Shown piece by piece: positions 10,054 to 57,606 of a stretch of DNA of 64,000 bases (position 1 is the first letter of the stretch; the number at the start of each line of letters is the position of its first letter). The notes beneath the pieces were generated by a model. It was not told the origin of the DNA, did not search any database, and was given only the letters and a program-made list of their open reading frames with translations. Origin of the DNA: Macrostomum lignano (lineage: Eukaryota); contig NIVC01000067.1 of the NCBI GenBank assembly GCA_002269645.1, forward strand, positions 248,001 through 312,000, written 5' to 3'. A program made the translations under genes and the position numbers.

Positions 10054-11022
10054 AGGGGCGTCGCTACCGGGGGGGGGGACTGGCGGGACATGTCCCCCCA
10101 GTAAAAGATATGGAAGACATGCCAATGCTCTGTGTCCCCCACCCCACCTTGTGACCCGATATGGAAATCAATAATTTTGCTGAAGGGCGACCAAACATAG
10201 CGCCTGCAGCGCCAAAATGAGTGCCTGCGACGTCAAAAAATGAGTGCTTGCGGCACCAAAATGAGTGCCTGCAGCGCCAAAAAATGAGTGCTTGCGGCGC
10301 TAAAGTGAGAGCATGCGGTGGTAAAATGATTGCCTGTGGCGCTAGAATGAGTGCCTGCAGCGCTAAAATGAGTGCATGCGGCGCTAAAATGAGTGCATGC
10401 GGCGCTAAAATGAGTACATGCGGCGCTAAAATGAGTGCATGCGGCGCTAAAATGAGTGCATGCGGCCCTAAAATGAGTGCATGCGGCGCTAAAATGAGTG
10501 CATGCGGCGCTAAAATGAGTGCCTGCAGTGCCAAAATGAGTGCCTGCGGCGCTAAAATGAGTGCCTGCAGTGCCAAAATGAGTGCCTGCAGCGCCAAAAT
10601 GAGTGTCTGCGGCGCCAAAATGAGTGTCTGCGGCGCCAAAATGAGTGCATGCGGCGCTAAAATGAGTGCATGCGGCGCTAAAATGAGTGCATGCGGCGCT
10701 AAAATGAGTGCATGCGGCGCTAAAATGAGTGCATGCGGCGCTAAAATGAGTGCATGCGGCCCTAAAATGAGTGCATGCGGCGCTAAAATGAGTGCATGCG
10801 GCCCTAAAATGAGTGCCTGCAGTGCCAAAATGAGTGCCTGCAGCGCCAAAATGAATGTCTGTGGTGCAAAAATGATCGTGCTGACAACACTGATTTCTGA
10901 AAATAATGAGTGCAATGAGTGAATGAGTGAAAATAATGTACATGTAGGAATTTAGTTATGTGCATTCTGTGTAGAATTCTTGGTTTTGTCCCCCCCCCAC
11001 CATAAAATCCATGGCGACGCTG
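10054..11022. mobile_element. MITE-like element with imperfect GC-rich terminal inverted repeats and an internal 21-bp tandem array
   Basis: Left end AGGGGCGTCGCTA, right end TGGCGACGCTG, G9/C9 subterminal runs; AAAATGAGTGCATGCGGCGCT repeated ~30 times at ~10205-10870. Confidence 0.45.
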
Positions 11023-17345: not shown

Positions 17346-17380
<35 letters not shown>

Positions 17381-31593: not shown

Positions 31594-34121
31594 TCATTCT
31601 CCGGGCACCTGAGTTTGCCTTGGAGCAATTGTACACGGGGCGTTGAAGCTGCCGCACTGCCAGTTGCCCTCGCTGTTCTTCGGCTTCAAGCAGATGAAGC
31701 AGAACTCTTGGCCGCAGATGCACTTCATATGCTTGCAAGAGCGAACATGCTCGATGATCATGCCGCAGTGGATGCAGGCGCGGCGACCGGGCACGTCTGG
31801 ATGCGTGATTTTGGGGATAAAACATTGTCTGGCTCTGGGGGGAGTTGTGTAGTGGACACATGTACTTTTGACAGAGCCAGCCACTGCTGCTCAAACTGTC
31901 TATGGTCCAAATAAACTAGAGCCGTAAAAGGCCCAGCCGCAGCACATTATTAAAGGACAAGCGGTCTTCATCTCGCCGCACACGAGCCGCTTCATACATG
32001 TATTTAATGCCACCTCCCTTAGCTTTAATGCTTGTCTCCCTACAGCAGAGGGTTTGTCTCAAGTCGAGAAGAGGGACCAGTGGTGCGAAGTCGTTCGATT
32101 TCGAAACTTGGCTTTATGCTTCATGTTGGGATTTTGGACTCAGGGTTAATTGATCTAACACAGTCTAACACGGTCTGATGACGAATATTACGTAGTGTCT
32201 GCGCGCGTATTCTTTGGCAGAGCAGCTCAGCGGTTAACGCCCTCGATTCTCCCACCAAACACCCTGGGTTCGATTTTGAGCGCGGCCTCATTAACAAGCC
32301 AACAAGCCATTTCTTCCGCCCGTCGAACTACCAAGGGGGGAATCCCCTGACAATTTTTTGCTGCGCCGTAAGGGAACCACGCAGGCACACGAAATTTATG
32401 AGCACGGGCTAACTTTCTGTTGTAAACCTTCTCAAACAAGAATCAAGTCGCCAGCCCTCCAGACCGTCGAGATATTCAACGATTTTGCCAGAAGGTCAGA
32501 TTTTTTCTAGCGTCGTAAAAGCGCTTGTGAATTCAATACATCCCGTGTGTGCCAATCAGCACTGCGCCTCAGAGCGGCCTTGCTAGACCTCCAGATTTCA
32601 TCAGGAAGTCAACCACATGCGTCTGCATCAGCTCTGACTTCGTTGGTCACTGGCCTTCACGCAGGCGGAGCTTCTGGATCCTCGACAGTGGGCAAGCCTA
32701 AACTGCAGGACATCATCAGCTGGTCTCTCAAGCATTCCGTCTTCACCCCGACGCCCCGAGGGTGAAAAGTCCTCCCTCCTGGTGCTCCCCCCTCCATACG
32801 CCCGTACTACGTCATACTTAAAGTGCACCCCCCTGCAGGCCAACTGACCCTTCACGCCGACAATCTCTTTGACCGGCGCCGCGGCCAGAATGGCAATCCG
32901 AGGGTCCTTGCCGGAGCAGATGTCATTGCCGCACTTGTCCGTGCCAGCACTGCGCCACTTGTTCAAGCAGTACCAGCAGAACTCGAAACGCTGCCTGCCT
33001 CCGCTGGAACAGGCGGGGCAGACCACGCGACGATCGCGCGAGCTGACGCGCTTGCAGTAGGAGTGACAGCTCGGGCACTCCTGTGTGAGGAACCGTTCGG
33101 AAATGAATCACTTTTAAAGCTGCCAGTTGCAACAGAAAACACGCTGTTAACGTTTGCGGCGTCACGGGATATCTGTCAGCTGACAATCTTGCATTTCTAT
33201 AAAGTATTAAGTTTCTTATAATCGAACGTTTCTTACCTGAATATTCACCGCCCGTCGCAAGTAGTTCTCGGAAATCTTTCGTTCAAACTCTTGCCTCTCC
33301 TCGTCGCTAAGCACGGCCAGCCGTCGTATAACGACGAAGTCCCATTCGACGGGGCAGCCAACTCTGGAATCGTTCGGGTCCAGCCAGGGGCAGAGGAAGC
33401 GGTAGAGGCCGGAGTCCAGCAGGCTGCGACAGTACATGGTGAGGCTGTCCGGTCCGATGGCGTGGCCGCAGGGCATTTTGACTCGCAAGTTGTCTTTGTC
33501 GTCGTCCCAGGTGATCATGTCCGGCTCCTCGGTGAGCTCAACGCAGTCGCCCAGCTCCTTGACACAGAATTATAGTTGCGTGCAAATATCAGAATCTAAG
33601 AATTTCAGAAGCCATACCAAATTCTGTGATGAACCGGTACAGGTATTACTCACTCTTAGTCTTGAGCCACCTGGTAGACGCAGCACCATGTGGAGATTGG
33701 CGTGATTCTCCAAGTGAAAGTCGGACAGATGCTTGTCTTTGTGCTGTTCAAAGTCGATAGTCTTGCTCGCGTAGACCATCTGGTAGGTGCCAGGTTCGAG
33801 TCCCGTCTTGTCCTCCAGCTTGCGAAACAGATCCTTGATCTGAGCATCCTATAGGTCGTGGAGAGTGCATTGCTTCATTTTTCTTTCACATCGTTACGGG
33901 GTTGGCACTGGATATGTTAGACTAAGAGAGCACGGATAATCCTTTGTTAGAACGGGGTTTGCCTGTGAACTGAAACTGCTCACTAGCTCTGGTCCTAATT
34001 GTTTTCCTCGTACAGGTAAGTACAAACAAAAGTAGGTGCTTATCATTCTTACCTTGAGAATGCTAACTGTCTCTGTGCGGCTGTTGTAATCCTTCCCGAA
34101 AATCTGTAATAAATTATCCAT
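31594..34121 (-). CDS. Ubiquitin-like domain + degenerate RING1 + IBR + Rcat (RBR-type E3 ligase), copy A, ~339 aa; exons 34121-34053, 33848-33654, 33557-33237, 33080-32849, 31796-31594
   Basis: Spliced ORF of 1020 nt with GT-AG junctions (phases 0,0,0,1). The Ubl ends NLHMVLRLPGG, followed by MPCGHAIGPDSL...FLCP...GC, IBR ECPSC...CPAC...FCWYC and Rcat CIHC...SCKHMKCICGQEFCFIC. Confidence 0.88.
32216..32290 (+). mobile_element. tRNA-derived SINE head inside RBR copy A intron 4
   Basis: GGCAGAGCAGCTCAGCGGTTAA...GGGTTCGATT...GCGGCCTCATT; related to 2538-2612. Confidence 0.4.
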
Positions 34122-34909: not shown

Positions 34910-37900
34910 CCATCACCAGCCCCCATCTCCCACAGATCCCCAATCTCAGCTCCCATCTCCCACAGATCCCCAATCTCAACTCCCATTTCCCACAGATCCC
35001 CAATCTCAGCTTCCATCTCCCACAGATCCTCAATCTCAGCTCCCGTCTCCCACAGATCCTCAATCTCAGCTTCCATCTCCCACAGATCCTCAATCTCAGC
35101 TCCCGTCTCCCACAGATCCTCAATCTCAGCTCCTATCTCCCACAGATCCCCAATCTCAGCTCCCATCTCCCACAGATCCTCAATCTCAGCTCCCATCTCC
35201 CACAGATCCTCAATCTCAGCTCCTATCTCCCACAGATCCTCAATCTCAGCTCCCATCTCCCACAGATCCCCAATCTCAGCTCCCATCTCCCACAGATCCC
35301 CAATCACAGCTCCCATTTCCCACAGATCCCCAATCTCAGCTTCCATTTCCCACAGATCCCCAATCTCAGCTCCCATCTCCCACAGATCCCCAATCTCAGC
35401 TCCTATCTCCCATAGATCCTCAATCTCAGCTCCCGTCTCCCACAGATCCTCAATCTCAGCTCCTATCTCCCACAGATCCTCAATCTCAGCTCCCATCTCC
35501 CACAGATCCTCAATCTCAGCTCCCATCTCCCACAGATCCTCAATCTCAGCTCCCATCTCCCACAGATCCTCAATCTCAGCTCCCATTTCCCACAGACCCT
35601 CAATCTCAGCTCCCGTCTCCCACAGATCCCCAATCTCAGCTCCCATCTCCCACAGATCCTCAATCTCAGCTCCCATCTCCCACAGATCCTCAATCTCAGC
35701 TCCCATCTCCCACAGATCCCCAATCTCAGCTCCCATACATCCCCAATCTCAGCTCCCATTTTCCACAGATCCCCAATCTCAGCTCCCATTTTCCACAGAT
35801 CCCCAATCTCAGCTCCCATTTCCCACAGATCCCCAATCTCAGCTCCCATTTTCCACAGATCTCCAATCTCAGCTCCCATCTCCCACAGATCCCCAATCTC
35901 AGCTCCCATCTCCCACAGATCCCCAATCTCAGCTCCCATTTTCCACAGATCCCCAATCTCAGCTCCCATTTTCCACAGATCCTCAATCTCAGCTCCCATC
36001 TCCCACAGATCCTCAATCTCAGCTCCCATCTCCCACAGATCCTCAATCTCAGCTCCCATCTCCCACAGATCCCCAATCTCAGCTCCCATACATCCCCAAT
36101 CTCAGCTCCCATACATCCCCAATCTCAGCTCCCATACATCCCCAATCTCAGCTCCCATTTTCCACAGATCCCCAATCTCAGCTCCCATTTCCCACAGATC
36201 CCCAATCTCAGCTCCCATTTCCCACAGATCCCCAATCTCAGCTCCCATTTCCCACAGATCCCCAATCTCAGCTCCCATTTCCCACAGATCCCCAATCTCA
36301 GCTCCCATTTCCCACAGACCCTCAATCTCAGCTCCCATCTCCCACAGATCCCCAATCTCAGCTCCCGTCTCCCACAGATCCCCAATCTCAGCTCCCATCT
36401 CCCACAGATCCTCAATCTCAGCTCCCATCTCCCACAGATCCTCAATCTCAGCTCCCATCTCCCACAGATCCTCAATCTCAGCTCCCATCTCCCACAGATC
36501 CCCAATCTCAGCTCCCATTTCCCACAGATCCCCAATCTCAGCTCCCATTTTCCACAGATCTCCAATCTCAGCTCCCATCTCCCACAGATCCCCAATCTCA
36601 GCTCCCATCTCCCACAGATCCCCAATCTCAGCTCCCATTTTCCACAGATCCCCAATCTCAGCTCCCATTTTCCACAGATCCTCAATCTCAGCTCCCATCT
36701 CCCACAGATCCTCAATCTCAGCTCCCATCTCCCACAGATCCTCAATCTCAGCTCCCATCTCCCACAGATCCCCAATCTCAGCTCCCATACATCCCCAATC
36801 TCAGCTCCCATACATCCCCAATCTCAGCTCCCATTTTCCACAGATCCCCAATCTCAGCTCCCATTTTCCACAGATCCCCAATCTCAGCTCCCATTTCCCA
36901 CAGATCCCCAATCTCAGCTCCCATTTCCCACAGATCCCCAATCTCAGCTCCCATTTCCCACAGATCCCCAATCTCAGCTCCCATTTCCCACAGATCCCCA
37001 ATCTCAGCTCCCATTTCCCACAGACCCTCAATCTCAGCTCCCATCTCCCACAGATCCTCAATCTCAGCTCCCGTCTCCCACAGATCCCCAATCTCAGCTC
37101 CCATCTCCCACAGATCCTCAATCTCAGCTCCCATCTCCCACAGATCCTCAATCTCAGCTCCCATCTCCCACAGATCCTCAATCTCAGCTCCCATCTCCCA
37201 CAGATCCCCAATCTCAGCTCCCATTTCCCACAGATCCCCAATCTCAGCTCCCATTTCCCACAGACCCTCAATCTCAGCTCCCGTCTCCCACAGATCCCCA
37301 ATCTCAGCTCCCATTTTCCACAGATCCCCAATCTCAGCTCCCATTTTCCACAGATCCCCAATCTCAGCTCCCATCTCCCACAGATCCCCAATCTCAGCTC
37401 CCATTTTCCACAGATCCCCAATCTCAGCTCCCATTTTCCACAGATCCCCAATCTCAGCTCCCATTTCCCACAGATCCCCAATCTCAGCTCCCATTTCCCA
37501 CAGATCCCCAATCTCAGCTCCCATTTCCCACAGATCCCCAATCTCAGCTCCCATTTCCCACAGATCCCCAATCTCAGCTCCCATTTCCCACAGACCCTCA
37601 ATCTCAGCTCCCGTCTCCCACAGATCCCCAATCTCAGCTCCCATCTCCCACAGATCCCCAATCTCAGCTCCCATTTCCCACAGATCCCCAATCTCAGCTC
37701 CCATTTCCCACAGATCCCCAATCTCAGCTCCCATTTCCCACAGATCCCCAATCTCAGCTCCCATCTCCCACAGATCCCCAATCTCAGCTCCCATACATCC
37801 CCAATCTCAGCTCCCATACATCCCCAATCTCAGCTCCCATTTTCCACAGATCCCCAATCTCAGCTCCCATTTTCCACAGATCCCCAATCTCAGCTCCCAT

Positions 37901-39075
37901 TTCCCACAGATCCCCAATCTCAGCTCCCATTTCCCACAGATCCCCAATCTCAGCTCCCATTTCCCACAGATCCCCAATCTCAGCTCCCATTTCCCACAGA
38001 TCCCCAATCTCAGCTCCCATTTCCCACAGACCCTCAATCTCAGCTCCCATCTCCCACAGATCCTCAATCTCAGCTCCCGTCTCCCACAGATCCCCAATCT
38101 CAGCTCCCATCTCCCACAGATCCTCAATCTCAGCTCCCATCTCCCACAGATCCTCAATCTCAGCTCCCATCTCCCACAGATCCTCAATCTCAGCTCCCAT
38201 CTCCCACAGATCCCCAATCTCAGCTCCCATTTCCCACAGATCCCCAATCTCAGCTCCCATTTCCCACAGACCCTCAATCTCAGCTCCCGTCTCCCACAGA
38301 TCCCCAATCTCAGCTCCCATTTTCCACAGATCCCCAATCTCAGCTCCCATTTTCCACAGATCCCCAATCTCAGCTCCCATCTCCCACAGATCCCCAATCT
38401 CAGCTCCCATTTTCCACAGATCCCCAATCTCAGCTCCCATTTTCCACAGATCCCCAATCTCAGCTCCCATTTCCCACAGATCCCCAATCTCAGCTCCCAT
38501 TTCCCACAGATCCCCAATCTCAGCTCCCATTTCCCACAGATCCCCAATCTCAGCTCCCATTTCCCACAGATCCCCAATCTCAGCTCCCATTTCCCACAGA
38601 CCCTCAATCTCAGCTCCCGTCTCCCACAGATCCCCAATCTCAGCTCCCATCTCCCACAGATCCCCAATCTCAGCTCCCATTTCCCACAGATCCCCAATCT
38701 CAGCTCCCATTTCCCACAGATCCCCAATCTCAGCTCCCATTTCCCACAGACCCTCAATCTCAGCTCCCGTCTCCCACAGATCCCCAATCTCAGCTCCCAT
38801 CTCCCACAGATCCCCAATCTCAGCTCCTATCTCCCACAGATCCTCAATCTCAGCTCCCGTCTCCCACAGATCCCCAAACTCAGCTCCCATCTCCCACAGA
38901 TCCCCAATCTCAGCTCCCATCTCCCACAGATCCCCAATCTCAGCTCCCATCTCCCACAGATCCTCAATCTCAGCTCCCATCTCCCACAGACCCTCAATCT
39001 CAGCTCCCATCTCCCACAGATCCCCAATCTCAGCTCCCATTTCCCACAGATCCTCAATCTCATACAGATCTCCCA
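34910..39075. repeat. 30-bp minisatellite (CAGCTCCCATCTCCCACAGATCCCCAATCT), ~4.1 kb, with higher-order structure, between the two RBR genes
   Basis: Direct tandem repetition; 23-bp deletion variants mark a 1006-bp higher-order period. Confidence 0.95.
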
Positions 39076-39150: not shown

Positions 39151-42100
39151 TCACTCCCCGGGAACCTCGGTTTGCCTCGGTGCCACAGCGCATGGCTCCC
39201 TGTAGCTGCCGCACTGCCAGTTGCCCCTGTCGTTCTTCGGCTTCAAGCAGATGAAGCAGAACTCTTGGTCGCAGACGCACTTCATGTGCTTGCAGGCGGT
39301 CACGTGCTCGATGATCATGCCGCACTTGATGCAGGCGCGGCGGCCGGGCACGTCTGGAGACGAGATTATGGTTATAAAAATTGCACTTTAACGCTACTTT
39401 AACGAGTCTGTTGTTATTCCATGAGAATTTCGAATGGCACAGGTTTAGGTTTATAAAGAATTGCTAATTGCCCCGGTGACCTACCGGGCACGCCGACGAT
39501 CGTCTTGACCTTCGCCGCGGCCAGAATGGCGATCCGAGGGTCCTTGCCCGAGCAGATGTCGTTGCCGCACTTGGTCGTGCCCGGGGTGCGCCACTTGTTC
39601 AAGCAGTACCAGCAGAACTCGAACAGCCGCCCCTTGTCCGGCTCCGAGCACACCGGACAGATCATTCGGCGATCGCGACCGCTGCGGCGCTGGCAGAACG
39701 ACCTGCAGCCTGGGCACTCCTGCGGGGTTGAGAGCGAGTCTGAGTGTGTTAGTGTCTATCTGTCTGTCCGGGTGTCCATCTGTCTGTCTGTCTGTCCGGG
39801 TGTCCATCTGTCTGTCTGTCTGTCCGGGTGTCCATCTGTTTGTCTGGGTGTGTTAGTGTCTATCTGTCTGTCCGGGTGTCCATCTGTCTGTCTGTCTTTC
39901 CGGGTGTCCATCTGTCTGTCTGTCTGTCCGGGTGTCCATCTGTCTATCTGTCTGTCCGGGTGTCCATCTGTCTGTCTGTCTGTCCGGGTGTCCATCTGTC
40001 TGTCTGAGTGTGTTAGTGTCTATCTGTCTGTCCGGGTGTCCATCTGTCTGTCTGTCTGTCCGGGTGTCCATCTGTCTATCTGTCTGTCCGGGTGTCCATC
40101 TGTCTGTCTGTCTGTCCGGGTGTCCATCTGTCTGTCTGTCTGTCCGGGTGTCTATCTGTCTGTCTGGGTGTGTTAGTGTCTATCTGTCTGTCCGGGTGTC
40201 CATCTGTCTGTCTGTCTGTCCGGGTGTCCATCTGTCTGTCTGGGTGTGTTAGTGTCTATCTGTCTGTCCGGGTGTCCATCTGTCTGTCTGTCTGTCCGGG
40301 TGTCCATCTGTCTGTCTGAGTGTGTTAGTGTCTATCTGTCTGTCCGGGTGTCCATCTGTCTGTCTGTCTGTCCGGGTGTCCATCTGTCTGTCTGAGTGTG
40401 TTAGTGTCTATCTGTCTGTCCGGGTGTCCATCTGTCTTTCTGGGTGTCTCAGTGTCCATCTGTCTGTCTAAGTGTCTCAGTGTCCATCTGTCTGAATGCC
40501 TTAGTGCCCATCTATTTGGATGTCTTAGTGTCCATTTGGAAGTCTTAGTGTCCATTTGGATGTCTTAGTGTCCATCTGGGTGTCTTAGTGTCCATTTGGG
40601 TGTCTTAGTGTCCATTTGGATGTTTTAGTGTCCATTTGGGTGTCTTAGTGTCCATTTGGATGTCTTAGTATCCATTTGGGTGTCTTAGTGTCCATTTGGG
40701 TGTCTTAGTGTCCATTTGGGTGTCTTAGTGTCCATTTGAGTGTCTTAGTGTCCATTTGGGTGTCTTAGTGTCCATTTGGGTGTCTTAGTGTCCATTTGGG
40801 TGTCTTAGTGTCCATCTGGGTGTCTTAGTGTCCATTTGGGTGTCTTAGTGTCCATTTGGAAGTCTTAGTATCCATTTGGATGTCTTAGTGTCCATCTGGG
40901 TGTCTTAGTGTCCATTTGGGTGTCTTAGTGTCCATTTGGATGTTTTAGTGTCCATTTGGGTGTCTTAGTGTCCATTTGGATGTCTTAGTATCCATTTGGG
41001 TGTCTTAGTGTCCATTTGGGTGTCTTAGTGTCCATTTGGGTGTCTTAGTGTCCATTTGAGTGTCTTAGTGTCCATTTGGATGTCTTAGTATCCATTTGGA
41101 TGTCTTAGTGTCCATTTGGAAGTCTTAGTGTCCATCTGGGTGTCTTAGTGTCCATTTGGATGTCTGGGTGTCTGGTTGTCTGTCTGTGTGTTTTTGTACC
41201 TTTTGTAGCGTTTCTCTGCCATTACTTACCTGAATATTGACCGTCCGTCGCAGGTAGTTCTCAGAGATTTTGCGCTCAAACTCGCGCTTCTCAGCGTCGG
41301 TGAGCACGGCCAGCCGTCGCACGATCACGAAGTCCCACTCGGCGGGGCAGCCGACGCCCGCGTTGGCGGGGTCCACCCAGGGGCAGAGGAACCGGTAGCG
41401 CCCTGTGTCCAGCAGACTGTGGCAATAGCTGGTGAGGCTGTCCGGGCCGATGGCGTGGCCGCAGGGCATCTTCGCCCGCTTGCCGTCCTTGTCATCGTCC
41501 CAGGTGATCATGTCCGGCAGGTCGGTGAGCTCAACGCAGTCGTCTAGCTCCTGTGAGCACACAATTTTTCCTGGTCCGTGAGATTCTCTGGCTAGAACTT
41601 TTCTACCTTCTCTCAACAGGATTCCCCCACCGGGATTCTGCCACCGGGATTCTCCCACCGGGATTCTGCCACCGGGATTCTCCCACAGGGATTCTCCTAA
41701 CGGGATTCTGCCACCCGGATTCTGCCACCGGAGTTATCGCACCGGGATTCTCCCAACCGGAGTTATCCCACCGGGATTCTCCCACCGGAGTTATCCCACC
41801 GGGTTCTCCCACCGGGATTCTCCCACCGGAGTTATCCCACCGGGATTCTCCCACCTGAATTTTCCTACCGAGATTCTCCCTTTGGCACGTGGCGTCGGAG
41901 GGTGCTCTCGCTTCGCAGTGAACTCACCTTGGATCCGCCGTGCAGACGCAGCACCATGAAGAGATTGGAGTGATTCTCCAGGTGAAACTCGGTCAGGTGC
42001 TTGTCCTTGTGCTGCTCAAAGTCGATAGTCTTGCTCACGTAGACCATCTGGTAGGCACCCGGCTTGAGTCCTGTCTTATCCTCCAGCTTGCGAAACAGAT

Positions 42101-46085: not shown

Positions 46086-48389
46086 TCACTGAGCGGCGCC
46101 CGAAGCGGAGGCGGCGGTGGCGGCTGCGCTGCTCCGCTGTTTGAGCAGAGTCCAGTCAAAGGTGTAGTCGAACTGGTGATTGAGAGTGCGGAACAGGATC
46201 CGGAAGAGCTGTCTGAGGTACATATAGTCGGGAGCCTCCTCGAATCGAAGGCCGCGGCAATAGTTCAAGTACATGGTGAACTCGGCCGGGAAGCCTTTGC
46301 ACAGGGACTCGACTGGCGTTGACATCTTCTTCTCGCTGATCTTCTGGTACTTCTGCTTCTTGGTGTTGGCCTGCGGTTGGGAGTTATGGGAATTGAGGCT
46401 TTGGGATTGGGAATTAAGATAGTATATAGTGATGAACTGTGAGACATAAGCTATGAGCCGGGATTTATGAGCTATGATTTATTACCAATGATCATGGATT
46501 AATGAACTATGACCATAGATCTATGAGCTATGACCATGGATTTATGACCAATGACCATGGATTTATGACCAATGATCATGGATTAATAAACTATGACCAT
46601 AGATCTATGAGCTTTGACCATACATTTATGAGCTATGATCATAGATCTATGAGCTATGACCATGGATTTATGACCAATGACCATGGATTTATGACCAATG
46701 ACCATGGATTTATGACCAATGATCATGGATTAATGAACTATGACCATAGATCTATGAGCTATGACCATGGATTTATGACCAATGACCATGGATTTATGAC
46801 CAATGATCATGGATTAATAAACTATGACCATAGATCTATGAGCTTTGACCATACATTTATGAGCTATGATCATAGATCTATGAGCTATGACCATGGATTT
46901 ATGACCAATGACCATGGATTTATGACCAATGACCATGGATTTATGACCAATGATCATGGATTAATAAACTATGACCATAGATCTATGAGCTTTGACCATA
47001 CATTTATGAGCTATGATCATAGATCTATGAGCTATGACCATGGATTTATGACCAATGACCATGGATTTATGACCAATGACCATGGATTTATGACCAATGA
47101 TCATGGATTAATAAACTATGACCATAGATCTATGAGCTTTGACCATACATTTATGAGCTATGATCATAGATCTATGAGCTATGACCATGGGTTTTCTAGC
47201 CATGACCATAGATAAAAGCTATGAGCAATGGAGATGAGCAATAATCGGTGAATATGAAGCAACGTAGATGAATGAAACAAAGCCGCAAAGGATTTCACCT
47301 GCAGTCCCTGCCACGGTAGCGAGCCCCTATTAAAGTACATCAGCACGTAGCCAAGCGCTTCCATGTCATCGCGTCTGGACTGTTCGATGCCCAGGTGAGC
47401 ATTGATTGAAGCGTAGCGGGCCGTGCCAGTGAGGTTTTTGTCCTCGCTGCGGGAATTGAGTTCGGGACATTTTATACCAGACTAATCCATTAATCATTTT
47501 TAAATAACAGATCTCTTGATGACTAATCATATGCTCACCGGTAAGGGATGTGCTTTCCGGAACGACTATCGCGAAACTTTTTAGCCAATCCGAAGTCAAT
47601 GATGAACACCTGGCGCGGGCGGGCGGAAATCGATTTATAGGATTTCTTAGTTAAGGGATTAAGATTCTTCAATGGGAATAAGGAATTCGGATTATTGGGT
47701 TGGGACTTGGATTATTGCATTGGGGATTTGGGTTATTGGGTTTGGGATTTGGATTATTGGGTTAAGGACTTGGATTATTGCATTGGGGATTTGGGTTATT
47801 GGGTTGAGGATTTGGATTATTGGGTTGGGGATTTGGGTTATTGGGTTGGGGATTTGGATTATTGTGTTGGGGATTTGGGTTATTGGGTTGGGGATTTGGA
47901 TTATTGTGTTGGGGATTTGGGTTATTGGGTTGGGGATTTGGATTATTGTGTTGGGGATTTGGATTATTGGGTTGGGGATTTGGATTATTGTGTTGGGGAT
48001 TTGGATAATTGGGTTGGGGATTGGGATTTTTGGTTAAGGATTGGGGATAATTAAGCTGGGGAATGGGATTATTTGCACCCTCAGACTCACCTTGTTGCAG
48101 TGACGCCCGATTCCCATGAGGAAGTTGTCCGGCTTGATGTCGCGGTGAATGAAGTTTTTGTTGTGCACGTACTCGATGCGGTTGATCATCTGGTCGGCCA
48201 GCATCAGCACGGTCTTCATAGTGAACCGGCGAGAGCAGAAGCTGAACAGGTCCTCCAGGCTGGGGCCCAGCAGGTCCATCACCAGCACGTTGTAGTCCTT
48301 CTCTACACCGAACCAGCTGCGTGGGCGGGGAGACAGAGTGGGCACGGGTTCAGGACAATGGACAGGAAGTGTCAGGCAGACAGACAGAC

Positions 48390-48424
<35 letters not shown>

Positions 48425-48443
48425 GTCAAACAGACAGACAGAC

Positions 48444-48499
<56 letters not shown>

Positions 48500-48608
48500 G
48501 ACAGACAGACAGACAGACAGACAGAAGGACAGACAGAAGGACAGACAGACAGACAGACAGGACAGACAGACAGACAGACAGACAGAAGGACAGACAGACA
48601 GACAGAAG

Positions 48609-48682
<74 letters not shown>

Positions 48683-51600
48683 AGGACAGACAGACAGACA
48701 GCACAACAGCGCCAAGATCCCTCAGACTCACCGCACATGTGGAATGCCAATGCCGCCCTGCAGCAGCTTGTACAGTTTGCTTTCATACAGAAGCTGCGGA
48801 TGGCGCGCCTTCTGACTCTCCAGTTTTACAGCAATTTCCTTAGAAATAAAAAGAAGACACGCGTGTACTTTGTTGAGTTATATAAAACAGTCAATATAAA
48901 AAGATATAAATGCATATATTGTTTTATTTTAGATAAATTTCTAACAAATAAACCAGTATATGTTTGCATATTCGAAATAAGAAATAAGTGTATTATGTGT
49001 AATCTGAAAAAAAAACATTTACTTGGAAATGCATTTTGTAACCTTCTTAAGCATACTAAGCATATATTAGCAACCTAAAATATGGCCTAAAACCTAAAAT
49101 CATAGCACTATAGAATATGAGCTAATACTTTTATCTTTAACAATGTTCTTATACTAAAGCATTAAGCACTAGCTTTGCATGTAACTGTTCTGAATTTCAT
49201 GCCATATTAAGACAATAGTTCTAGGTTCATTATTATAATGGATATTTATTTAGGATATTATATTAGAGATTTGCAATTTATCTACAAAGCTGTTTGTTAA
49301 TGACTTTGCAGCCTCTAATACCGAATTTCAATCTTTGTTCAACTGCACATATAGAGCATTAACAATCGAACTACTTTAATAATGATTATTAGAATTCCTA
49401 GGATTTTAGGACCTCTACTGAGTAATTCCAAAGTAGACAATTTCAAAGAAATGGAAATCTCTAGATTACACCTAAACTAATAGAGCTATGAAATGCTATG
49501 AAAATGCTATTTTATAAGAAATATCTATCCACAAGAAGCCTATATATGATTATAGACTGATTTCTAATTGCCAAATAAGAGTTTTATAGCTTTTTGTTTA
49601 AATTACCTAAATTAGCTTACACAAAAATTCATAACTTAGACTTATTATTACTAGCCATTACTTTTAGCCTTTGGGTAGAAACTCAACTTAGGCTTTAAAA
49701 ATGGACCCCAAGTAACCTATAAGAAAGGTTTCCTATAAAAAGAAAAGTAATAAAAAAGTTACAAAACTTTTTGCATTTAAAATTTTCAACATTTTTGTAA
49801 AATATTTTGCCTATTAAGCATTATAATCATTTTTGCTCACAAACTTATTCTTTATAAATATTTCCAACAAGTTTTTACTATTTTTTAACTAATAGGCCTA
49901 TCTATGTCCAATCCAAAGTTAGGAAACACTGCTCTATGCACCATATACTGGAACTACACCTTTTTGCATTATTTTTTGATAAAACTACATTCAATTTCGG
50001 CAAACTGGATTTCATTTTTGGCATCAGCTATGGCCGCACATCTACATTGCATTCAAATTTGACAAACCAAAAACCAATTTTGACAAACTGCATTAAATTT
50101 TAGCAACTCAAGTTTCTATTTAGACAAACTGATATTCAAATTCAGCAAACTGGATTCAATTTTGGCATTGTATATTCAATTTTGGCAGCCTTTGAAAAAG
50201 GGCCTTTATTGTTGCAATGCTTCTTTAATAATTTCTGACATATTATATCATAAAAACATTTGTTTTTTGGTGTAAATTTGAATTTACAATGTAAGAAATC
50301 ACTTTTTTGGTCTATTGTATAATAGATTTAAGAGTGTGATGAAATGGCACAAATTTACAATAGTGAACTATTGTGATGCACTAGATTTTATATGCCAAGC
50401 ATATTTTCAGGTCTATTATACACTAGAAAAATCTAGCATATATATAAAGATTTAGGAATACAGTATTAACAAAAATATTTAGAGGAAAATGAAAAATTAT
50501 AACATAATATAAACTAATAATATATAAATTTTTCTTTCTATGACTACTATAGTTTAGATTGTATATTAGTGTATGCCAGGTTAAATGCCAAAAAATGATG
50601 AGACCTTATTTGTATGCTGGGTTTGTGTGCTAATATAAAAAAATTGTCATTTGACACAATGTATCTACTATTATGTATATTGCAATATACCTTGATATAT
50701 ACTGAAAAATGGTAAGACCCTTGTTGTATGCCGGGAAATCCTAGCGTACATGTATAAAGATAGTAATCAACTGTCATTTAGGGACTATTGTAGGAACTAT
50801 TAGGAATAGGACTTAGGGTTTAGGCTAAGAAATTAGGGAATTGTATTGTTATCAAAGTGTGGTGGAGTATAGCAGTTGTGGATAGCTGCACTCTTACAAA
50901 AAGCTACAAGCGCTTAAAGATAACAGTGCTGTGCAAAGGGCAAGTGTAGGCCACCCTAAAAGTCTGCTTCCACTTTAAAGGGGTTGTATGCTTTTATGTG
51001 GGGTGGGGTTGTATGCCTTTATCAATTACATTTTTAAATAAAGACATTTAAGAAGTTGCATAAGAGTGGGAAACTATGAGAATTGGCCAGAATAGAATTG
51101 AAATGATATCTAGAAGATATGGGAAGTGACAATGCAGATAGTTTCACAGGGACTTCATTGGGAAAATTTACTATAAATAAGCAAGGGATTAAACGTCTAA
51201 TCTTTATTTATTTTACTCTCTTTATACTAACTTTTGAATTGCTTAAACAACTAGTTTGCCAAATTATGCCAATTGCTTCTGCAAAAACTAGCTATGAATA
51301 GAGGCTAAGACTAAGCACTGCCATGACTATAGATTTATGAAGCTTAGCTTAGTTATACCATAGTGTCTCAGACTTATTCTCCCAGCTTGTAGCTTGCTTA
51401 TTTATATAAACATTAAAAATACAGTTATTAAATATAAAATTCTATGCTTAATTAGAAAATACCATCTAGGAGTATTCTACCTTGTTTGAGTTATTATTAC
51501 TCATATGTTAGACTCTAGTTAGTGGCTGGCTAGACCCTTATAACATGTCACTTCCTAACCTATGGTATAACTATAATATAAATATTTTTTCTTTTAGCTT

Positions 51601-53012: not shown

Positions 53013-53562
53013 CTAACAGCACGGTTTGTAGGTGCACGTGGTCTGTGGCGGCTCGTCACACACATTTGTCGTGGTGGTGTAGGTTCGCTGAAAATTTTGA
53101 GGGTGCGTGTCTTTGTTTTCTTTTTCAATTTCTCAATGCGAACGCTTCAGCCAGTAACGATCTTGCATGTTACTCGTAGTTTGCAGTATTACTGCTGCTT
53201 ACCTTCTGCTCAGTAGCACAGCAGGTCTTTCCGCAAGGGTTGCACGCCGGAGCACACGGAGCGCAGGCCGGAGCACATGGGCTGCATGAAGGAGCGCAGG
53301 CCGGAGCACACGGAGCGCAGGCCGGAGCACACGGAGCGCAGGCCGGAGCACATGGGCTGCATGAAGGAGCGCAGGCCGGAGCACACGGAGCGCAGGCCGG
53401 AGCACATGGGCTGCATGAAGGAGCGCAGGCCGGAGCACACGGAGCGCAGGCCGGAGCACATGGGCTGCATGAAGGAGCGCAGGCCGGAGCACACGGAGCG
53501 CAGGCCGGAGCACATGGGCTGCATGAAGGAGCGCAGGAGACCTGGGTGCTGCAGAACGACAT
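53013..53562 (-). CDS. Cys/Pro/Ala-rich repeat protein, copy 1 (144 aa); exons 53562-53203, 53087-53013
   Basis: ATG preceded by an acceptor (ATTTCAG) and a short UTR. (CAPSCSPCAPACAPCAPA)n repeats, then CNPCGKTCCATEQK|GTAAGC...TTTTCAG|RTYTTTTNVCDEPPQTTCTYKPCC*. Confidence 0.8.
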
Positions 53563-54293
53563 GCTGACTGCTGGTTAGTTGAAGATGATGCTCTGAAATC
53601 AGGAGACGGATGTCGTTAGTGTTACTGTGAGTAGTAAAATATCGCAGTAAAGATGTTTTAAACAGTCGCTAATCCAATATACTAAAACTAAGCTGTTAAA
53701 TGATTTATAAGTTTGGTTAGTCCTAGGTAAGTTGGGACCTGCTGAATCATGCAGAATATTTTACTAAGGGCAAATTTGAAAACTTTGAAAGGACTTAAAT
53801 TAAAGGAACGCCTATTCTAGTAGTATGACAGTCCATATACTAAGTATGCTAGCTGTTAAATTATTTAGACACATTCTGTCTGCTGAGCAAAGGGGTCAGA
53901 TGAAAGTAAAAAAATATTATAACGTTAGGAAAACTGCTGTGCACTGTGATGAATAGCATCGCATTTTCAGTGTATTTTGATGGAATTGGTTGCAAGCGTT
54001 CTGATTCAGATTCTACTTCTAAATAGTATTTAAAGTGAAAGGGAGTAATTTAAAACACGTTTGAAAGTGAATTGACTATTTTTATAGGCTTTTAATCCAT
54101 TTTTAAGAGTGAAAGAGTAGATCTAAAAGTCATGGGTCTTAAAAATGTGCCGTGAATTTGTTTCTTATTCAAGAAGTTCTTATTGTTTAAAGTGCGTTTC
54201 GTGACTGTGTTAAAAACTGAATTGCAGTGTTATTGTAGTCCAAAGAAAGAAGCTAGCAGATTTCGAAGAACTGGAGTTCTCAGCGGCATGCAG

Positions 54294-54722
54294 CTAGCAG
54301 CAGGGCTTGTAGGTGCACGTGGTCTTGGGCGGGTCGTCACACACCTTTGTCGTGGTGGTGTAGGTTCGCTGAAAATGTTGATTGTGCGCCTTTGGTTTGT
54401 TTCAAATTTTCGATGCAAACGCTTCAGATGTACTTTAGAGGCCATTCAGTAATGACCGTGCATGTTAGTTTATTGACACTGCATGCTTAATTACCTTCTG
54501 CTCAGTAACGCAGCAGGTCTTTCCGCAAGGATTGCACGCCGGAGCACAGGGAGCGCAGGCCGGGGCACAGGGAGCGCAGGCCGGAGCACAGGGAGCGCAG
54601 GCCGGAGCACAGGGAGCGCAGGCCGGAGCACAGGGAGCGCAGGCCGGGGCACACGGAGCGCAGGCCGGAGCACATGGGCTGCATGAAGGAGCGCAGGAGA
54701 CCTGGGTGCTGCAGAACGACAT
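54294..54722 (-). CDS. Cys/Pro/Ala-rich repeat protein, copy 2 (100 aa); exons 54722-54495, 54368-54294
   Basis: Near-identical N-terminus to copy 1 (MSFCSTQVSCAPSCSP), (CAPACAP)n, CNPCGKTCCVTEQK|...|RTYTTTTKVCDDPPKTTCTYKPCC*. Flanks are duplicated with copy 1. Confidence 0.8.
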
Positions 54723-55357
54723 GCTGACTGCTGGTTAGTTGAAGATGATGCTCTGAAATCAGGAGCCAGATGCCTTTAGTGTTACTGTGAGTAGTAAAAT
54801 ATTGCAATAACGATGTTTTAAACAATTAAGCCTAAATTTAATAGCCTAACTCTATTCCATAAGCTGTTACATGATTTATGAGTTTGGTTAGTCCTAGGGT
54901 AAGTTGGGACCTACTGCATCATGCAGAATATTTTACTGAGGGCAAATTTGAAAACTTTAAAAGGATTTAAATAAGGAAACTTTATTCTAGTTTGACAGGT
55001 GACATCAATATTCTGCCTAAGTGAGAGCTGTTTAATAGACGTAAAATAATACGAAATCAAGCAGCCACACGAGGAGACAACCAAAGGCCAATTAGTATCT
55101 AAAAGTCTAATAGAACAGTAATCTTGTGTATCAAAAAGTTGGACTTATTTTTTCAAAATGTTCTTAGATTTGACCGGAATAAATGACAATATTTTTGTGA
55201 GCGCTCAGTCGGAGTGCTGGCTCGCTGGAGTGAAGCTATAATTTGTTGTGGTCCAGGAGTAAAGCAAGCTGTTAATGTTCAGTTCATAGTGGCTGGTTGT
55301 CAGACTGAGATCCTTTCTGCATTGCTGCTGGTTGTCATGACCAGATCTCGCTTTTTT

Positions 55358-57136
55358 CTAGTAGCACGGACGGCCGCCCTTGTAAGATTTCGTGTCGTAA
55401 TAGCAGGTGGTCTTGGCTGGCTGGTCGCACACTTTAGTGGTAGTCAGGTAGGTCCTCTGTAAGAGTGGCGACTTGATGATTAATTGATTGTACGCAACAC
55501 GGATTGGAAATTTCAAAAAGAGAGGAGGGGAGAGGAGAGCAGGGGAGAGGAGAGGAGAGCAGGGGAGAGGAGAGGAGAGCAGGGGAGAGGAGAGGAGAGG
55601 AGAGCAGGGGAGAGGAGAGGAGAGCAGGGGAGAGGAGAGGAGAGGAGAGCAGGGGAGAAGAGAGGAGAGCAGGGGAGGGGAGAGGAGAGGAGAGCAGGGG
55701 AGAGGAGAGGAGAGCAGGGGAGGGGAGAGGAGAGGAGAGCAGGGGAGAGGAGAGGAGAGGAGAGTAGGGGAGGGGAGAGGAGAGGAGAGCAGGGGAGGGG
55801 AGAGGAGAGGAGAGCAGGGGAGAGGAGAGGAGAGGAGAGCAGGGGAGGGGAGAGGAGATGAGAGTAGGGGAGGGGAGAGGAGAGGAGAGCAGGGGAGGGG
55901 AGAGGAGAGGAGAGCAGGGGAGAGGAGAGGAGAGGAGAGCAGGGGAGAGGAGAGGAGAGGAGAGCAGGGGAGGGGAGAGGAGAGGAGAGTAGGGGAGGGG
56001 AGAGGAGAGGAGAGCAGGGGAGGGGAGAGGAGAGGAGAGCAGGGGAGAGGAGAGGAGAGGAGAGCAGGGGAGAGGAGAGGAGAGGAGAGCAGGGGAGGGG
56101 AGAGGAGAGGAGAGCAGGGGAGGGGAGAGGAGAGGAGAGCAGGGGAGAAGAGAGGAGAGCAGGGGAGGGGAGAGGAGAGGAGAGCAGGGGAGAGGAGAGG
56201 AGAGCAGGGGAGGGGAGAGGAGAGGAGAGCAGGGGAGAGGAGAGGAGAGGAGAGCAGAGGAGAGGAGAGGAGAGCAGGGGAGATGAGAGGAGAGGAGAGG
56301 AGAGGAGAGGAGAGGAGAGGAGAGCAGGGGAGAGGAGAGGAGAGCAGGGGAGAGGAGAGGAGAGCAGGGGAGAGGAGAGGAGAGCAGGGGAGAGGAGAGG
56401 AGAGTAGGGGAGGGGAGAGGAGAGGAGAGCAGGGGAGAGGAGAGGAGAGCAGGGGAGAGGAGAGGAGAGCAGGGGAGAGGAGAGCAGGGGAGAGGAGAGG
56501 AGAGCAGGGGAGAGGAGAGGAGAGTAGGGGAGGGGAGAGGAGAGGAGAGCAGGGGAGAGGAAAGGAGAGGAGAGGAGAGGAGAGCAGGGGAGAGGAGAGG
56601 AGAGCAGGGGAGGGGAGAGGAGACCAGAGAAGGCGAGAATAGACGAGAGGAGAAGAGGAGAGGTAATAGAATGGAGAAGAGAGGGGGATAGGAAGGGTAT
56701 AATTATTTCGTCTATTCACCAAAGAAAAAATGCAACTTCAAAGATTAAAAAACGTTAATTTTTTTTCAACCCGAACCAGTACGTTTTTGCATCATCCTTT
56801 TAAAGTTCGACCTTCGGAAATTGGACAGGGGTGCCAGCGATATGTGCTCACCTTCTGCTCGGTGGAGCTGCACGACTTGCCACACGGCTGGCTGCAGGTC
56901 ACGGTTGGCGCGCAGGCTGGCGCGCAGGTTGGCGCGCAGGCTGGCGCGCAGGCGGGTGCAGCGATGGCGCAGGGCGCGGCTGCCGCAGCCGGGGCGCAGG
57001 CTGGAGCAGCCAGAGTGTACGCTGGCGCCTGCACGCAGGGCACAGAGGCGTAGGACGCGGCGCACTGAACGTAGGGCCCCGGAGCGGAGTAGTACAGACC
57101 GCACGGGTTGGTGCCGTATGTGTAGCTGTAGGCCAT
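55358..57136 (-). CDS. Cys/Pro/Ala-rich protein, divergent copy 3 (127 aa); coding exons 57136-56852, 55456-55358; probable non-coding first exon ending at 57488
   Basis: MAYSYTYGTNPCGLYY...CAPACAPTCAPACAP...QPCGKSCSSTEQK|GTGAGC...TTACAG|RTYLTTTKVCDQPAKTTCYYDTKSYKGGRPCY*. Same intron position and phase as copies 1 and 2. Confidence 0.75.
55520..56690. repeat. (GGAGA)n/GCAGG purine-rich array filling the intron of Cys-rich copy 3
   Basis: Direct inspection. Confidence 0.92.
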
Positions 57137-57595
57137 CTTCTGCGGTGAGAAATTTTTTGCGGGAAAATATGAGCGCGAGGCTTCGGGGGGCAAAAATTCA
57201 TTGGGGAATTGCTGGAGAAGTCAAGGTAAGAAGTCAAGGATTCCGGGGGGATCGCAAAAATGCTTTGACTCTTGGGGACACAACGCCAAAAACCAAAATG
57301 CATCCTACTTCACATTGCCTAAGGTTCACAATCTACTTTCTACATGTAGTAAGTAGTTCAAAAATTTTATACATTTCTCTGTTGCCTCCCCAACGGGGGA
57401 CGCAGATTGCTAGTCTAATATACTAAAATAATTCTCAAGTAACTAATAAATTATTCCAAGACAGAGACAACAGACAAAGCAGCTTACCTCGATGCTGATT
57501 TCGACTCTTTAATAAAAGTTATTGTTGTCCTTTCAGAAGCTTAAAGCTGATTGAGCTCGATGTAAACTGCAGTCTGTTTCAGCTCTGAGACCGGT

Positions 57596-57606
57596 CTTAT
57601 TTATCC
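57596..57606 (-). promoter_or_regulatory. TATA-like element GGATAAATAAG upstream of Cys-rich copy 3
   Basis: Lies ~110 nt upstream of a strong donor (GAG|GTAAGC at 57487), whose intron would end at the acceptor 3 nt before the ATG. Confidence 0.35.

What the first reader, a model, noticed from the sequence alone, without database searches (positions are those of the whole stretch)
53013..57136. Three-gene cluster of intracellular Cys-x-Pro repeat proteins with a conserved C-terminal module
Seen: three two-coding-exon genes with variable-length CAP/CSP/CNP repeats (copy 1 has five 18-aa-type blocks, copy 2 has 7-aa blocks, copy 3 is Ala/Tyr-rich). They share PCGKxCxxTEQK|RTYxTTTxVCDxPxxTTCxY across a conserved phase-0 intron, and none has an evident signal peptide. 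Known: CxP repeats occur in sperm structural proteins (mammalian ODF1 CSP/CNP tail, Drosophila Mst87F-type CGP proteins) and in keratin-associated proteins that form disulfide-hardened structures. Inference: a lineage-specific family building rigid intracellular structures such as sperm bristles, stylet or rhabdite components. Metal binding is the alternative.
Basis: partly seen in the sequence, partly recalled or inferred. Interest (0 to 1): 0.7.

Follow-up and report, generated by a model that had tools for sequence, protein, structure and literature searches.

The report
Orphan flatworm Cys-Pro repeat gene cluster
Three neighbouring genes of the flatworm Macrostomum lignano encode small cysteine/proline/alanine repeat proteins with no signal peptide and a shared tail found in no other organism searched. 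They are real genes that probably make a disulfide-hardened structural material, but where they are expressed is untested.

Summary
Window 53013-57136 (minus strand) carries three two-coding-exon genes of 144, 100 and 127 aa. Each has a canonical GT-AG, phase-0 intron at the same place, after ...TEQK.

Purifying selection on that module shows these are genes, not open frames through minisatellites. pN/pS is 0.24-0.29, and synonymous sites are near saturation between copy 3 and copies 1/2. Copy 3 equals UniProt A0A1I8IME0, an uncharacterised Macrostomum lignano protein.

The module is an orphan. An exhaustive HMM search of 1.84 billion representative proteins found only copy 3 itself.

Copy 1 passes Pfam MSSP (Drosophila Mst84D/87F sperm proteins). 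Controls show this comes only from C-x-P periodicity: a synthetic (CAPACAP)12 scores higher, and the same repeats also match the RNA polymerase II CTD at E=2.5e-22. It is analogy, not membership.

None of the three has a signal peptide, a C-x-C motif or a match to a metallothionein, keratin-associated-protein or HSP20 model. AlphaFold gives no fold.

The best reading is a lineage-restricted, cytosolic, disulfide cross-linking matrix protein family (confidence 0.4). Metal binding is not excluded. Expression site and function could not be tested here.

The parts
53203..53562 (-). g1 coding exon 1: MSFCSTQVS, then five 18/25-aa CAPSCSPCAPACAPCAPA blocks, then CNPCGKTCCATEQK
   Evidence: 54-nt repeat units 100% identical
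53088..53202 (-). g1 intron, 115 nt, GT-AG, phase 0
   Evidence: 63% identity (all columns) to the g2 intron, against 91-100% for the exons
53013..53087 (-). g1 coding exon 2: RTYTTTTNVCDEPPQTTCTYKPCC plus stop
54495..54722 (-). g2 coding exon 1: the same N-terminus, about seven CAPACAP heptads, then CNPCGKTCCVTEQK
   Evidence: 21-nt period, 6.7 copies, 95% identity
54369..54494 (-). g2 intron, 126 nt, GT-AG, phase 0
54294..54368 (-). g2 coding exon 2: RTYTTTTKVCDDPPKTTCTYKPCC plus stop
56852..57136 (-). g3 coding exon 1: Tyr/Ala-rich N-terminus, a short CAPACAPT repeat, then CSQPCGKSCSSTEQK
   Evidence: the spliced product is identical to UniRef A0A1I8IME0
55457..56851 (-). g3 intron, 1395 nt, GT-AG, phase 0, at the same position as in g1 and g2. 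It contains a 1.13-kb GA-rich minisatellite (55520-56653).
55358..55456 (-). g3 coding exon 2: RTYLTTTKVCDQPAKTTCYYDTKSYKGGRPCY plus stop
53593..53605 (-). Acceptor-like CTCCTGATTTCAG 30 nt before the g1 ATG, with an identical copy at 54753-54765 before g2. It may be a cis- or SL trans-splice acceptor (inference only).
   Evidence: an in-frame TAA lies between it and the ATG
53703..53709 (-). TATA-like TATAAAT 141 nt upstream of the g1 ATG (CATAAAT at 54874-54880 for g2); inference only
57488..57604 (-). Putative non-coding 5' exon of g3. It runs from an ATAAATAAG box (57596-57604) to the donor GAG|GTAAGC at 57488/57487. The putative 5'-UTR intron is 57140-57487 and ends CCGCAG just before AAG-ATG. 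Inference only.
   Evidence: the joined frame has a stop and no ATG upstream

Best explanation
This is a Macrostomum-restricted (orphan) family of small cytosolic proteins that act as disulfide cross-linking matrix material. They would work like keratin-associated proteins or the Drosophila Mst84D/87F and mammalian ODF1-tail sperm proteins.

Proposed mechanism:
- A non-globular, Pro-kinked repeat presents a cysteine every 3-4 residues (24-36 Cys in g1 and g2).
- A conserved 38-47 aa C-terminal module, rich in Cys and with Thr/Tyr beta-prone segments, serves as the constant docking or nucleating end.
- Hardening occurs when the thiols are oxidised late in differentiation of the producing cell.
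- The number of heptads, which changes quickly by unequal crossing-over, sets the number of cross-link sites.

Shown:
- gene structure;
- purifying selection on the module;
- recent within-gene repeat homogenisation;
- absence of a signal peptide;
- composition and Cys spacing;
- orphan status.

Inferred:
- disulfide cross-linking;
- the structural role;
- the tissue (male germline/sperm or the intracellularly formed stylet are candidates only).
For: Real, constrained genes:
- pN/pS is 0.24-0.29 with pS up to 0.78.
- 9 synonymous against 4 non-synonymous codon differences between g1 and g2.
- The intron position and phase are conserved.
- The g3 model equals UniRef A0A1I8IME0.

Composition:
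- g1 is 25% Cys, 24% Ala, 22% Pro.
- Cys spacing alternates 3/4, with 28 CxP motifs, an even Cys count (36 and 24 in g1 and g2), no His and almost no charge in the repeats.

Pattern match:
- The C-x-P periodic pattern is what the Pfam model of the Drosophila male-specific sperm proteins recognises: g1 23.9 bits against a cut-off of 21.2. Six composition-preserving shuffles give nothing.

Other points:
- No signal peptide and robust start codons.
- No fold is predicted (pLDDT 37.6). The heptad register equals that of the disordered Pol II CTD. Both fit an extended, non-globular chain.
- g3 combines a Tyr-rich region with the Cys repeat. That suits a matrix protein and does not suit a metal chelator.
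- The genes form a tandem cluster with fast repeat turnover.

Literature:
- Mst87F and Mst98C resemble mammalian ODF proteins (PMC12584897).
- Mst84Db is restricted to the male germ line (PMC3261232).
- Flatworm stylets form intracellularly (PMC4398949, citing Bruggemann 1986).
- M. lignano germline genes are enriched for Macrostomum-specific genes, 54% against 44.5% overall (PMC5816591).
Against: - There are no expression, localisation or biochemical data of any kind.
- The cytosol is reducing, so disulfide hardening needs a special cellular context that has not been demonstrated here.
- The similarity to known structural CxP proteins is pattern-level only.
- No KAP, LCE, SPRR or HSP20 model matches.
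- g2 is below the MSSP cut-off and g3 has no hit.
- Tandem clusters with variable internal repeats are also typical of invertebrate metallothioneins (own knowledge).
Confidence: 0.4

Rival explanations
1. Metal-binding, metallothionein-like cytosolic proteins. The CxxC/CxxxC array chelates Zn, Cd or Cu, and tandem duplication and heptad expansion raise binding capacity.
For: - g1 and g2 are 24-25% Cys, small, cytosolic, without His, and sit in a tandem cluster with variable repeat number.
- There are weak, non-significant matches to bacterial cytosolic copper storage proteins (Csp3, E 0.2-0.9).
Against: - There are zero C-x-C motifs and only two CC pairs.
- No metallothionein family of Pfam hits, even at E<=10.
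- Pro and Ala make up about 45% of the repeats.
- g3 has 13 Tyr and only 12% Cys, yet shares the module and the intron.
- The conserved Thr/Tyr-rich module has no counterpart in metallothioneins.
- No Macrostomum metallothionein literature exists to compare with.
Confidence: 0.15
2. Functional proteins of another kind, neither matrix nor metal chelator. Examples are a thiol redox buffer, a low-complexity condensate scaffold, or a component exported by a non-classical route into eggshell, cement or adhesive.
For: - Orphan status and predicted disorder give no positive functional anchor.
- The Tyr-rich g3 N-terminus is reminiscent of Tyr-cross-linked shell proteins. The only related match is a very weak one to DEC-1_N (E 8.3).
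Against: - No signal peptide and no upstream coding extension is possible.
- Flatworm shell and adhesive proteins are classically secreted (own knowledge).
- The strict Cys periodicity argues for a thiol-based role.
Confidence: 0.2
3. Not genes at all: open frames through GC-rich minisatellites in a genome full of tandem repeats, or decaying pseudogenes.
For: - 35% of the window is tandem repeat and many arrays give long ORFs in several frames.
- All frames are open through the g1 and g2 repeats.
- g1 and g2 are absent from the 15-billion-protein collection.
Against: - The non-repetitive module is conserved across saturated synonymous divergence, with pN/pS about 0.25.
- Start codon, stop codon and GT-AG phase-0 intron are kept in all three copies.
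- Exons are more conserved than the intron.
- The differences between the g1 and g2 repeat units are synonymous.
- g3 is an annotated protein.
Confidence: 0.05

Closest known systems
Drosophila Mst84Da-d / Mst87F male-specific sperm proteins (Pfam PF03940 MSSP)
   Same: - Both are small, Cys/Pro repeat proteins without a signal peptide.
- Both have a C-x-P periodicity; g1 passes the Pfam gathering score.
- Both lie in a tandem gene cluster (own knowledge for Mst84D).
   Different: - The repeat here is the heptad CAPCAPA or an 18-mer, not the tripeptide C-G-P. There is no Gly in the repeats.
- There is a conserved non-repeat C-terminal module split by an intron, with no Pfam match.
- g2 and g3 fail the model.
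- The hit is reproduced by a synthetic (CAPACAP)12, so it gives no evidence of common descent.
Mammalian ODF1 (outer dense fibre protein 1), C-terminal C-x-P repeats
   Same: Both carry a C-x-P (CSP/CNP/CGP) repeat tail in an intracellular, disulfide-stabilised sperm structure. The likeness to Mst87F is noted in the literature (PMC12584897).
   Different: - ODF1 has an alpha-crystallin/HSP20-type domain (own knowledge); none is detected here.
- The repeats here make up most of the protein.
Keratin-associated proteins (high-sulfur and high-Gly/Tyr KAPs)
   Same: - Both are small, cytosolic matrix proteins in tandem clusters with variable repeat number.
- Both include Cys-rich and Tyr-rich members within one locus.
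- KAPs harden by disulfides, which is the mechanism proposed here.
   Different: - No match to any Pfam keratin-associated-protein (KAP) family at E<=10.
- KAP repeats are CC-x-P pentamers, whereas CC is nearly absent here.
- KAPs are restricted to vertebrates.
Metallothioneins
   Same: Both have high Cys, small size and cytosolic location, and both occur in tandem clusters with modular repeats.
   Different: There is no C-x-C motif, the proteins are rich in Pro and Ala, aromatic residues are present (13 Tyr in g3), and no MT model hits.
Cnidarian minicollagen / NOWA cysteine-rich domains (CX3CX3CX3CX3CC)
   Same: g3 has runs of C-x3-C (CAPACAPTCAPACAPT...CSQPCGKSC). The best non-trivial PDB sequence match of g3 includes a NOWA CRD (2nx7).
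   Different: - The match has E=0.94, which is not significant.
- There is no terminal CC in g3.
- Minicollagens are secreted into the nematocyst vesicle, and there is no signal peptide here.

Membership tests
Pfam PF03940 MSSP (Mst84D/Mst87F) | Whole-protein score at or above the gathering cut-off of 21.2 bits | tested here: inconclusive
   g1 scores 23.9 bits (passes), g2 15.9 (fails), g3 has no hit. A synthetic (CAPACAP)12 scores 26.6, six shuffles of g1 give no hit, and the C-terminal module gives no hit. The score therefore reflects periodicity only.
Pfam PF03940 MSSP (Mst84D/Mst87F) | Cys-Gly-Pro tripeptide repeats | tested here: not met
   The repeats are CAP, CSP and CNP within 7- and 18-aa units. 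Gly occurs only once, in PCGK.
Pfam PF03940 MSSP (Mst84D/Mst87F) | Expression restricted to the male germ line | not testable with these tools
   No M. lignano transcript or expression data could be reached.
ODF1 | Alpha-crystallin/HSP20-type domain N-terminal to the CxP repeats | tested here: not met
   No HSP20 or other domain hit at E<=10. The N-termini are only 9 aa (g1, g2) or Tyr/Ala-rich low complexity (g3).
Keratin-associated proteins | Match to the Pfam keratin-associated-protein (KAP) families; CC-x-P pentamer repeats | tested here: not met
   No such hit at E<=10. CC count is 2, 2 and 0 in g1, g2 and g3.
Metallothionein | C-x-C / CC / C-x-x-C motif mix with very few aromatic residues | tested here: not met
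   C-x-C count is 0 in all three. g3 has 13 Tyr, and g1 and g2 have 1 Phe and 2 Tyr each. No Pfam metallothionein family hits at E<=10.
Metallothionein | Metal binding and metal-inducible expression | not testable with these tools
   This needs recombinant protein and exposure experiments.
Minicollagen/NOWA CRD | CX3CX3CX3CX3CC domain in a secreted protein | tested here: not met
   Only g3 has C-x3-C runs, without the terminal CC. The PDB match to 2nx7 has E=0.94. There is no signal peptide.
The family itself (C-terminal module PCGKxCxxTEQK|RTYxTTTxVCDxPxxTTCxY) | Module present, split by a phase-0 intron after TEQK | tested here: met
   Present in all three genes. No other carrier was found among 1.84e9 representative proteins.

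The most novel reading that the evidence does not exclude
These genes encode the so far unidentified building material of a sexually selected hard structure of Macrostomum, the stiff sperm bristles or the intracellularly formed stylet. Their rapidly changing heptad number would then be a direct genetic handle on the stiffness or shape of that structure.
Probability: 0.2. Interest if true: 0.6.

Novelty: new variant of a known kind. Interest (0 to 1): 0.35.

Why it matters
M. lignano is a transgenic, RNAi-amenable model for sexual selection and regeneration. As far as I know, and in the papers searched here, the molecular composition of its sperm bristles and stylet has not been described.

If this orphan family turns out to be the matrix of such a structure, it would be an independent invention of the C-x-P disulfide-hardening solution seen in fly and mammalian sperm and in hair. 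It would also link repeat-number variation to a morphological trait that can be measured.

If the proteins instead bind metals, they would be an unusual Pro-rich metallothionein type in a species used for marine toxicology.

As it stands, this is a well-supported gene family with an inferred function. It is of moderate interest.

Tried and rejected
- An exact look-up of the spliced and unspliced products of g1, g2 and g3 found only the UniRef entry for g3. No Logan or RNA-seq contig could therefore be used as evidence of transcription.
- The HMM of the C-terminal module against 1.84e9 proteins gave one extra hit, P0003. It is a multi-domain protein with repeats resembling chitin-binding peritrophin-A domains (my reading; no Pfam scan run). 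It matches only 12 positions (VCDWPSQAGC) and was rejected as chance.
- The g2 search hit P0002. It looks like a bacterial lipoprotein (my reading of its N-terminus) with CAPCEPAC repeats, and was rejected as a compositional analogue.
- AlphaFold2 of g3 with the three-sequence alignment gave pLDDT 37.6 and no secondary structure. No fold search was run because it would be meaningless.
- The search for promoter words shared by g1/g2 and g3 found one 9-mer, no more than shuffles give.
- There are no canonical AATAAA signals in the 3' flanks.
- Literature searches covered CAPACAP-type strings, Macrostomum with cysteine-rich/sperm, stylet in situ screens, Mst/ODF/KAP terms, metallothionein, single-cell atlases and tail-specific screens. 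The Blast2GO supplement of the prostate screen was also searched. Nothing concerns this family.
- The 454-aa ORF that runs from the g3 intron minisatellite into exon 2 (55358-56722) was considered as a longer exon and rejected. A pyrimidine-only strand cannot encode stops. The 22 non-repeat codons are open with chance probability of about 0.35. The conserved intron position and the UniProt model also argue for the short exon.
Full report
[quoted passage not shown] The window is typical of that genome. 35% of it is tandem repeat, against 15% genome-wide for simple and tandem repeats (PMC5730564). Many arrays give long ORFs in several frames. An open frame through a repeat is therefore not evidence for a gene here, and the finding had to be tested against that background.

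**Observation.** Three genes lie head to tail on the minus strand.
- g1: exon 1 53562-53203, intron 53202-53088, exon 2 53087-53013 (144 aa).
- g2: exon 1 54722-54495, intron 54494-54369, exon 2 54368-54294 (100 aa).
- g3: exon 1 57136-56852, intron 56851-55457, exon 2 55456-55358 (127 aa).

Each intron is GT-AG and phase 0, and it sits between ...TEQK and RTY....
- g1 has five CAPSCSPCAPACAPCAPA blocks, one of them with an extra heptad. Its 54-nt units are 100% identical.
- g2 has about seven CAPACAP heptads (21 nt, 95% identity).
- g3 has a Tyr/Ala-rich N-terminal half and a short CAPACAPT repeat.
- The module PCGKxCxxTEQK|RTYxTTTxVCDxPxxTTCxY has 26 invariant columns. It occurs only three times in the window.

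**Are they genes?** Yes, on four counts.
1. In the non-repetitive module, pN/pS is 0.29 between g1 and g2. It is 0.24-0.25 between either of them and g3, where pS is 0.74-0.78, which is near saturation. The peptide has been held constant over a long divergence.
2. Over the 74 alignable codons of g1 and g2 there are 9 synonymous and 4 non-synonymous codon differences. The fixed difference between the repeat units of the two genes is CCG against CCC, both Pro.
3. Identity between g1 and g2 varies by segment:

| Segment | Identity |
|---|---|
| First 66 coding nt | 100% |
| Exon 2 | 91% |
| 5' flank, ungapped columns | 88-91% |
| Intron, all columns | 63% |

4. Start codon, stop codon and intron position are kept in all three, and g3 is an annotated model.

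The start codons are robust. g1 and g2 have an in-frame TAA five codons upstream. g3 has no upstream in-frame ATG, either in the contiguous sequence or after joining a plausible 5' non-coding exon. A hidden signal peptide is therefore unlikely, and the N-termini themselves have no hydrophobic core. What is missing is direct evidence of transcription. The exact-sequence look-ups found no RNA-derived contig.

**Distribution.** A profile of the module was run with full HMMER against 1.84 billion representative proteins. It found g3 itself (78 bits) and one spurious 12-residue match in P0003, a multi-domain protein whose repeats resemble chitin-binding peritrophin-A domains (my reading, no Pfam scan run). 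Full-length g2 and g3 searches against 5.8 billion clusters found nothing else real. g1 and g2 are not in the 15-billion-protein collection at all. Within the data available, the family is an orphan. Other Macrostomum transcriptomes are apparently not in these databases, so the true breadth within the genus is unknown.

**Resemblances and controls.**
- Pfam reports MSSP (PF03940, the Drosophila Mst84D/Mst87F sperm proteins) for g1 at 23.9 bits, against a cut-off of 21.2. g2 scores 15.9 and g3 has no hit.
- Six shuffles of g1 give no hit, so composition alone is not enough. A synthetic (CAPACAP)12 scores 26.6, and the C-terminal module scores nothing.
- The g2 repeats also match the RNA polymerase II CTD heptads at E=2.5e-22, in the register CAPCAPA / YSPTSPS.
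- The MSSP hit therefore measures a Pro/Cys periodicity, not ancestry.
- No HSP20 domain (expected for ODF1), no keratin-associated-protein model and no metallothionein model hits at E<=10.
- The match of g3 to a NOWA cysteine-rich domain is not significant (E=0.94).
- AlphaFold2 gives no structure (pLDDT 37.6). Together with the CTD-like register, this fits an extended, turn-rich, non-globular chain.

**Mechanism.** g1 and g2 are 24-25% Cys, with the Cys spacing alternating 3 and 4. They have 16-28 C-x-P motifs, an even number of Cys, no His, no C-x-C and only two CC pairs. g3 shares the module and the intron but has only 12% Cys and 10% Tyr.

A constant C-terminal module is joined to a fast-changing array of evenly spaced thiols, in a protein with no signal peptide. 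That combination is best explained by a cross-linking matrix protein. The module would dock or nucleate, and the repeat would supply intermolecular disulfides once the cell's late differentiation allows oxidation. Keratin-associated proteins and the CxP sperm-tail proteins work this way. The likeness of Mst87F to ODF proteins is noted in PMC12584897, and Mst84Db is restricted to the male germ line (PMC3261232).

Candidate sites in this animal are the sperm and the stylet. Flatworm stylets form intracellularly (PMC4398949), and M. lignano germline genes are enriched for Macrostomum-specific genes (PMC5816591). None of this localisation is shown. I put the structural reading at 0.4.

**Rivals.**
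- Metal binding (0.15) is weakened by the missing C-x-C motifs, the Pro/Ala content, the Tyr-rich paralogue and the absence of any metallothionein model hit. However, cluster organisation and modular expansion also occur in invertebrate metallothioneins.
- A different, unknown role (0.2) cannot be excluded for a disordered orphan.
- Non-genes or pseudogenes (0.05) are contradicted by the selection tests.

**Evolution of the locus.** g1 and g2 are a tandem duplicate with a unit of 1160-1281 bp. Their repeats have been homogenised within each gene after the duplication: the units are gene-specific and there are synonymous fixed differences. g3 is much older (pS about 0.75).

Intergenic distances are short. 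It is 636 nt from the g3 stop to the g2 ATG, and 732 nt from the g2 stop to the g1 ATG. Each ATG is preceded by an acceptor-like site. In M. lignano, 38.8% of genes are trans-spliced and about 7% of assembled transcripts are multi-gene precursors (PMC5730564). A polycistronic unit is therefore possible but untested. No promoter words are shared by g1/g2 and g3 above chance.

**Verdict.** This is a new variant of a known kind of protein, not a member of any known family. Interest is moderate (0.35).

Noticed in passing
window 1-64000: About 35% of the window (22.6 kb) is minisatellite or microsatellite arrays with TRF score >=80. The largest is a 4.1-kb array of a 30-nt unit at 34917-39062. Many arrays give ORFs of 150-1400 aa in several frames, so ORF length means nothing here.
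   Followed up: partly
window 10205-10875: A 21-nt minisatellite reads as a Cys-containing heptad (KMSACGA) in open frames on both strands. It has no start codon, splice sites or C-terminal module. It is an in-window example of a non-coding look-alike of the g2 repeat.
   Followed up: partly
window 55358-56722 (minus): The GA-rich minisatellite inside the g3 intron is open in frame with exon 2, giving a 454-aa ORF. This is trivial for a pyrimidine-only strand, but it could mislead gene callers.
   Followed up: yes
window 53592, 54752, 57139 (minus): Acceptor-like sites lie directly 5' of all three start codons, and the intergenic distances on the same strand are short (636 and 732 nt). SL trans-splicing or a polycistronic precursor is possible, as is common in M. 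lignano.
   Followed up: no
window 16423-20707 (+): Exons of a Bicaudal-D homologue (Pfam BicD, 101 and 231 bits). A (CATC)n array (16997-17380) and a 42-nt array (18728-19578) lie between the BicD-matching ORFs, probably in introns.
   Followed up: partly
window 29000-29542 (+): An ORF with a sub-threshold match to the HhH-GPD base-excision repair domain (20.9 bits against a cut-off of 26.2). By eye it looks like an 8-oxoguanine glycosylase-type exon.
   Followed up: partly
window 48034-48786 (-): A protein-kinase exon (Pfam Pkinase, 37 bits). By eye it is casein-kinase-I-like and runs straight into a (CAGA)n array.
   Followed up: partly
window 32628-33026 (-) and 41125-41658 (-): Two ORFs with Cys-rich, RING/IBR-like strings (for example CPACSSGG..FCWYCLNKW and MPCGHAIGPDSLTSYC). 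Neither has a Pfam hit at E<=0.001. They may be exons of an RBR-type ligase.
   Followed up: no
g2 repeats, window 54534-54674: The heptad CAPCAPA has the same Pro register as the RNA polymerase II CTD heptad YSPTSPS. It matches PDB Rpb1 chains at E=2.5e-22. This is a useful warning that periodic low-complexity hits are not homology.
   Followed up: yes
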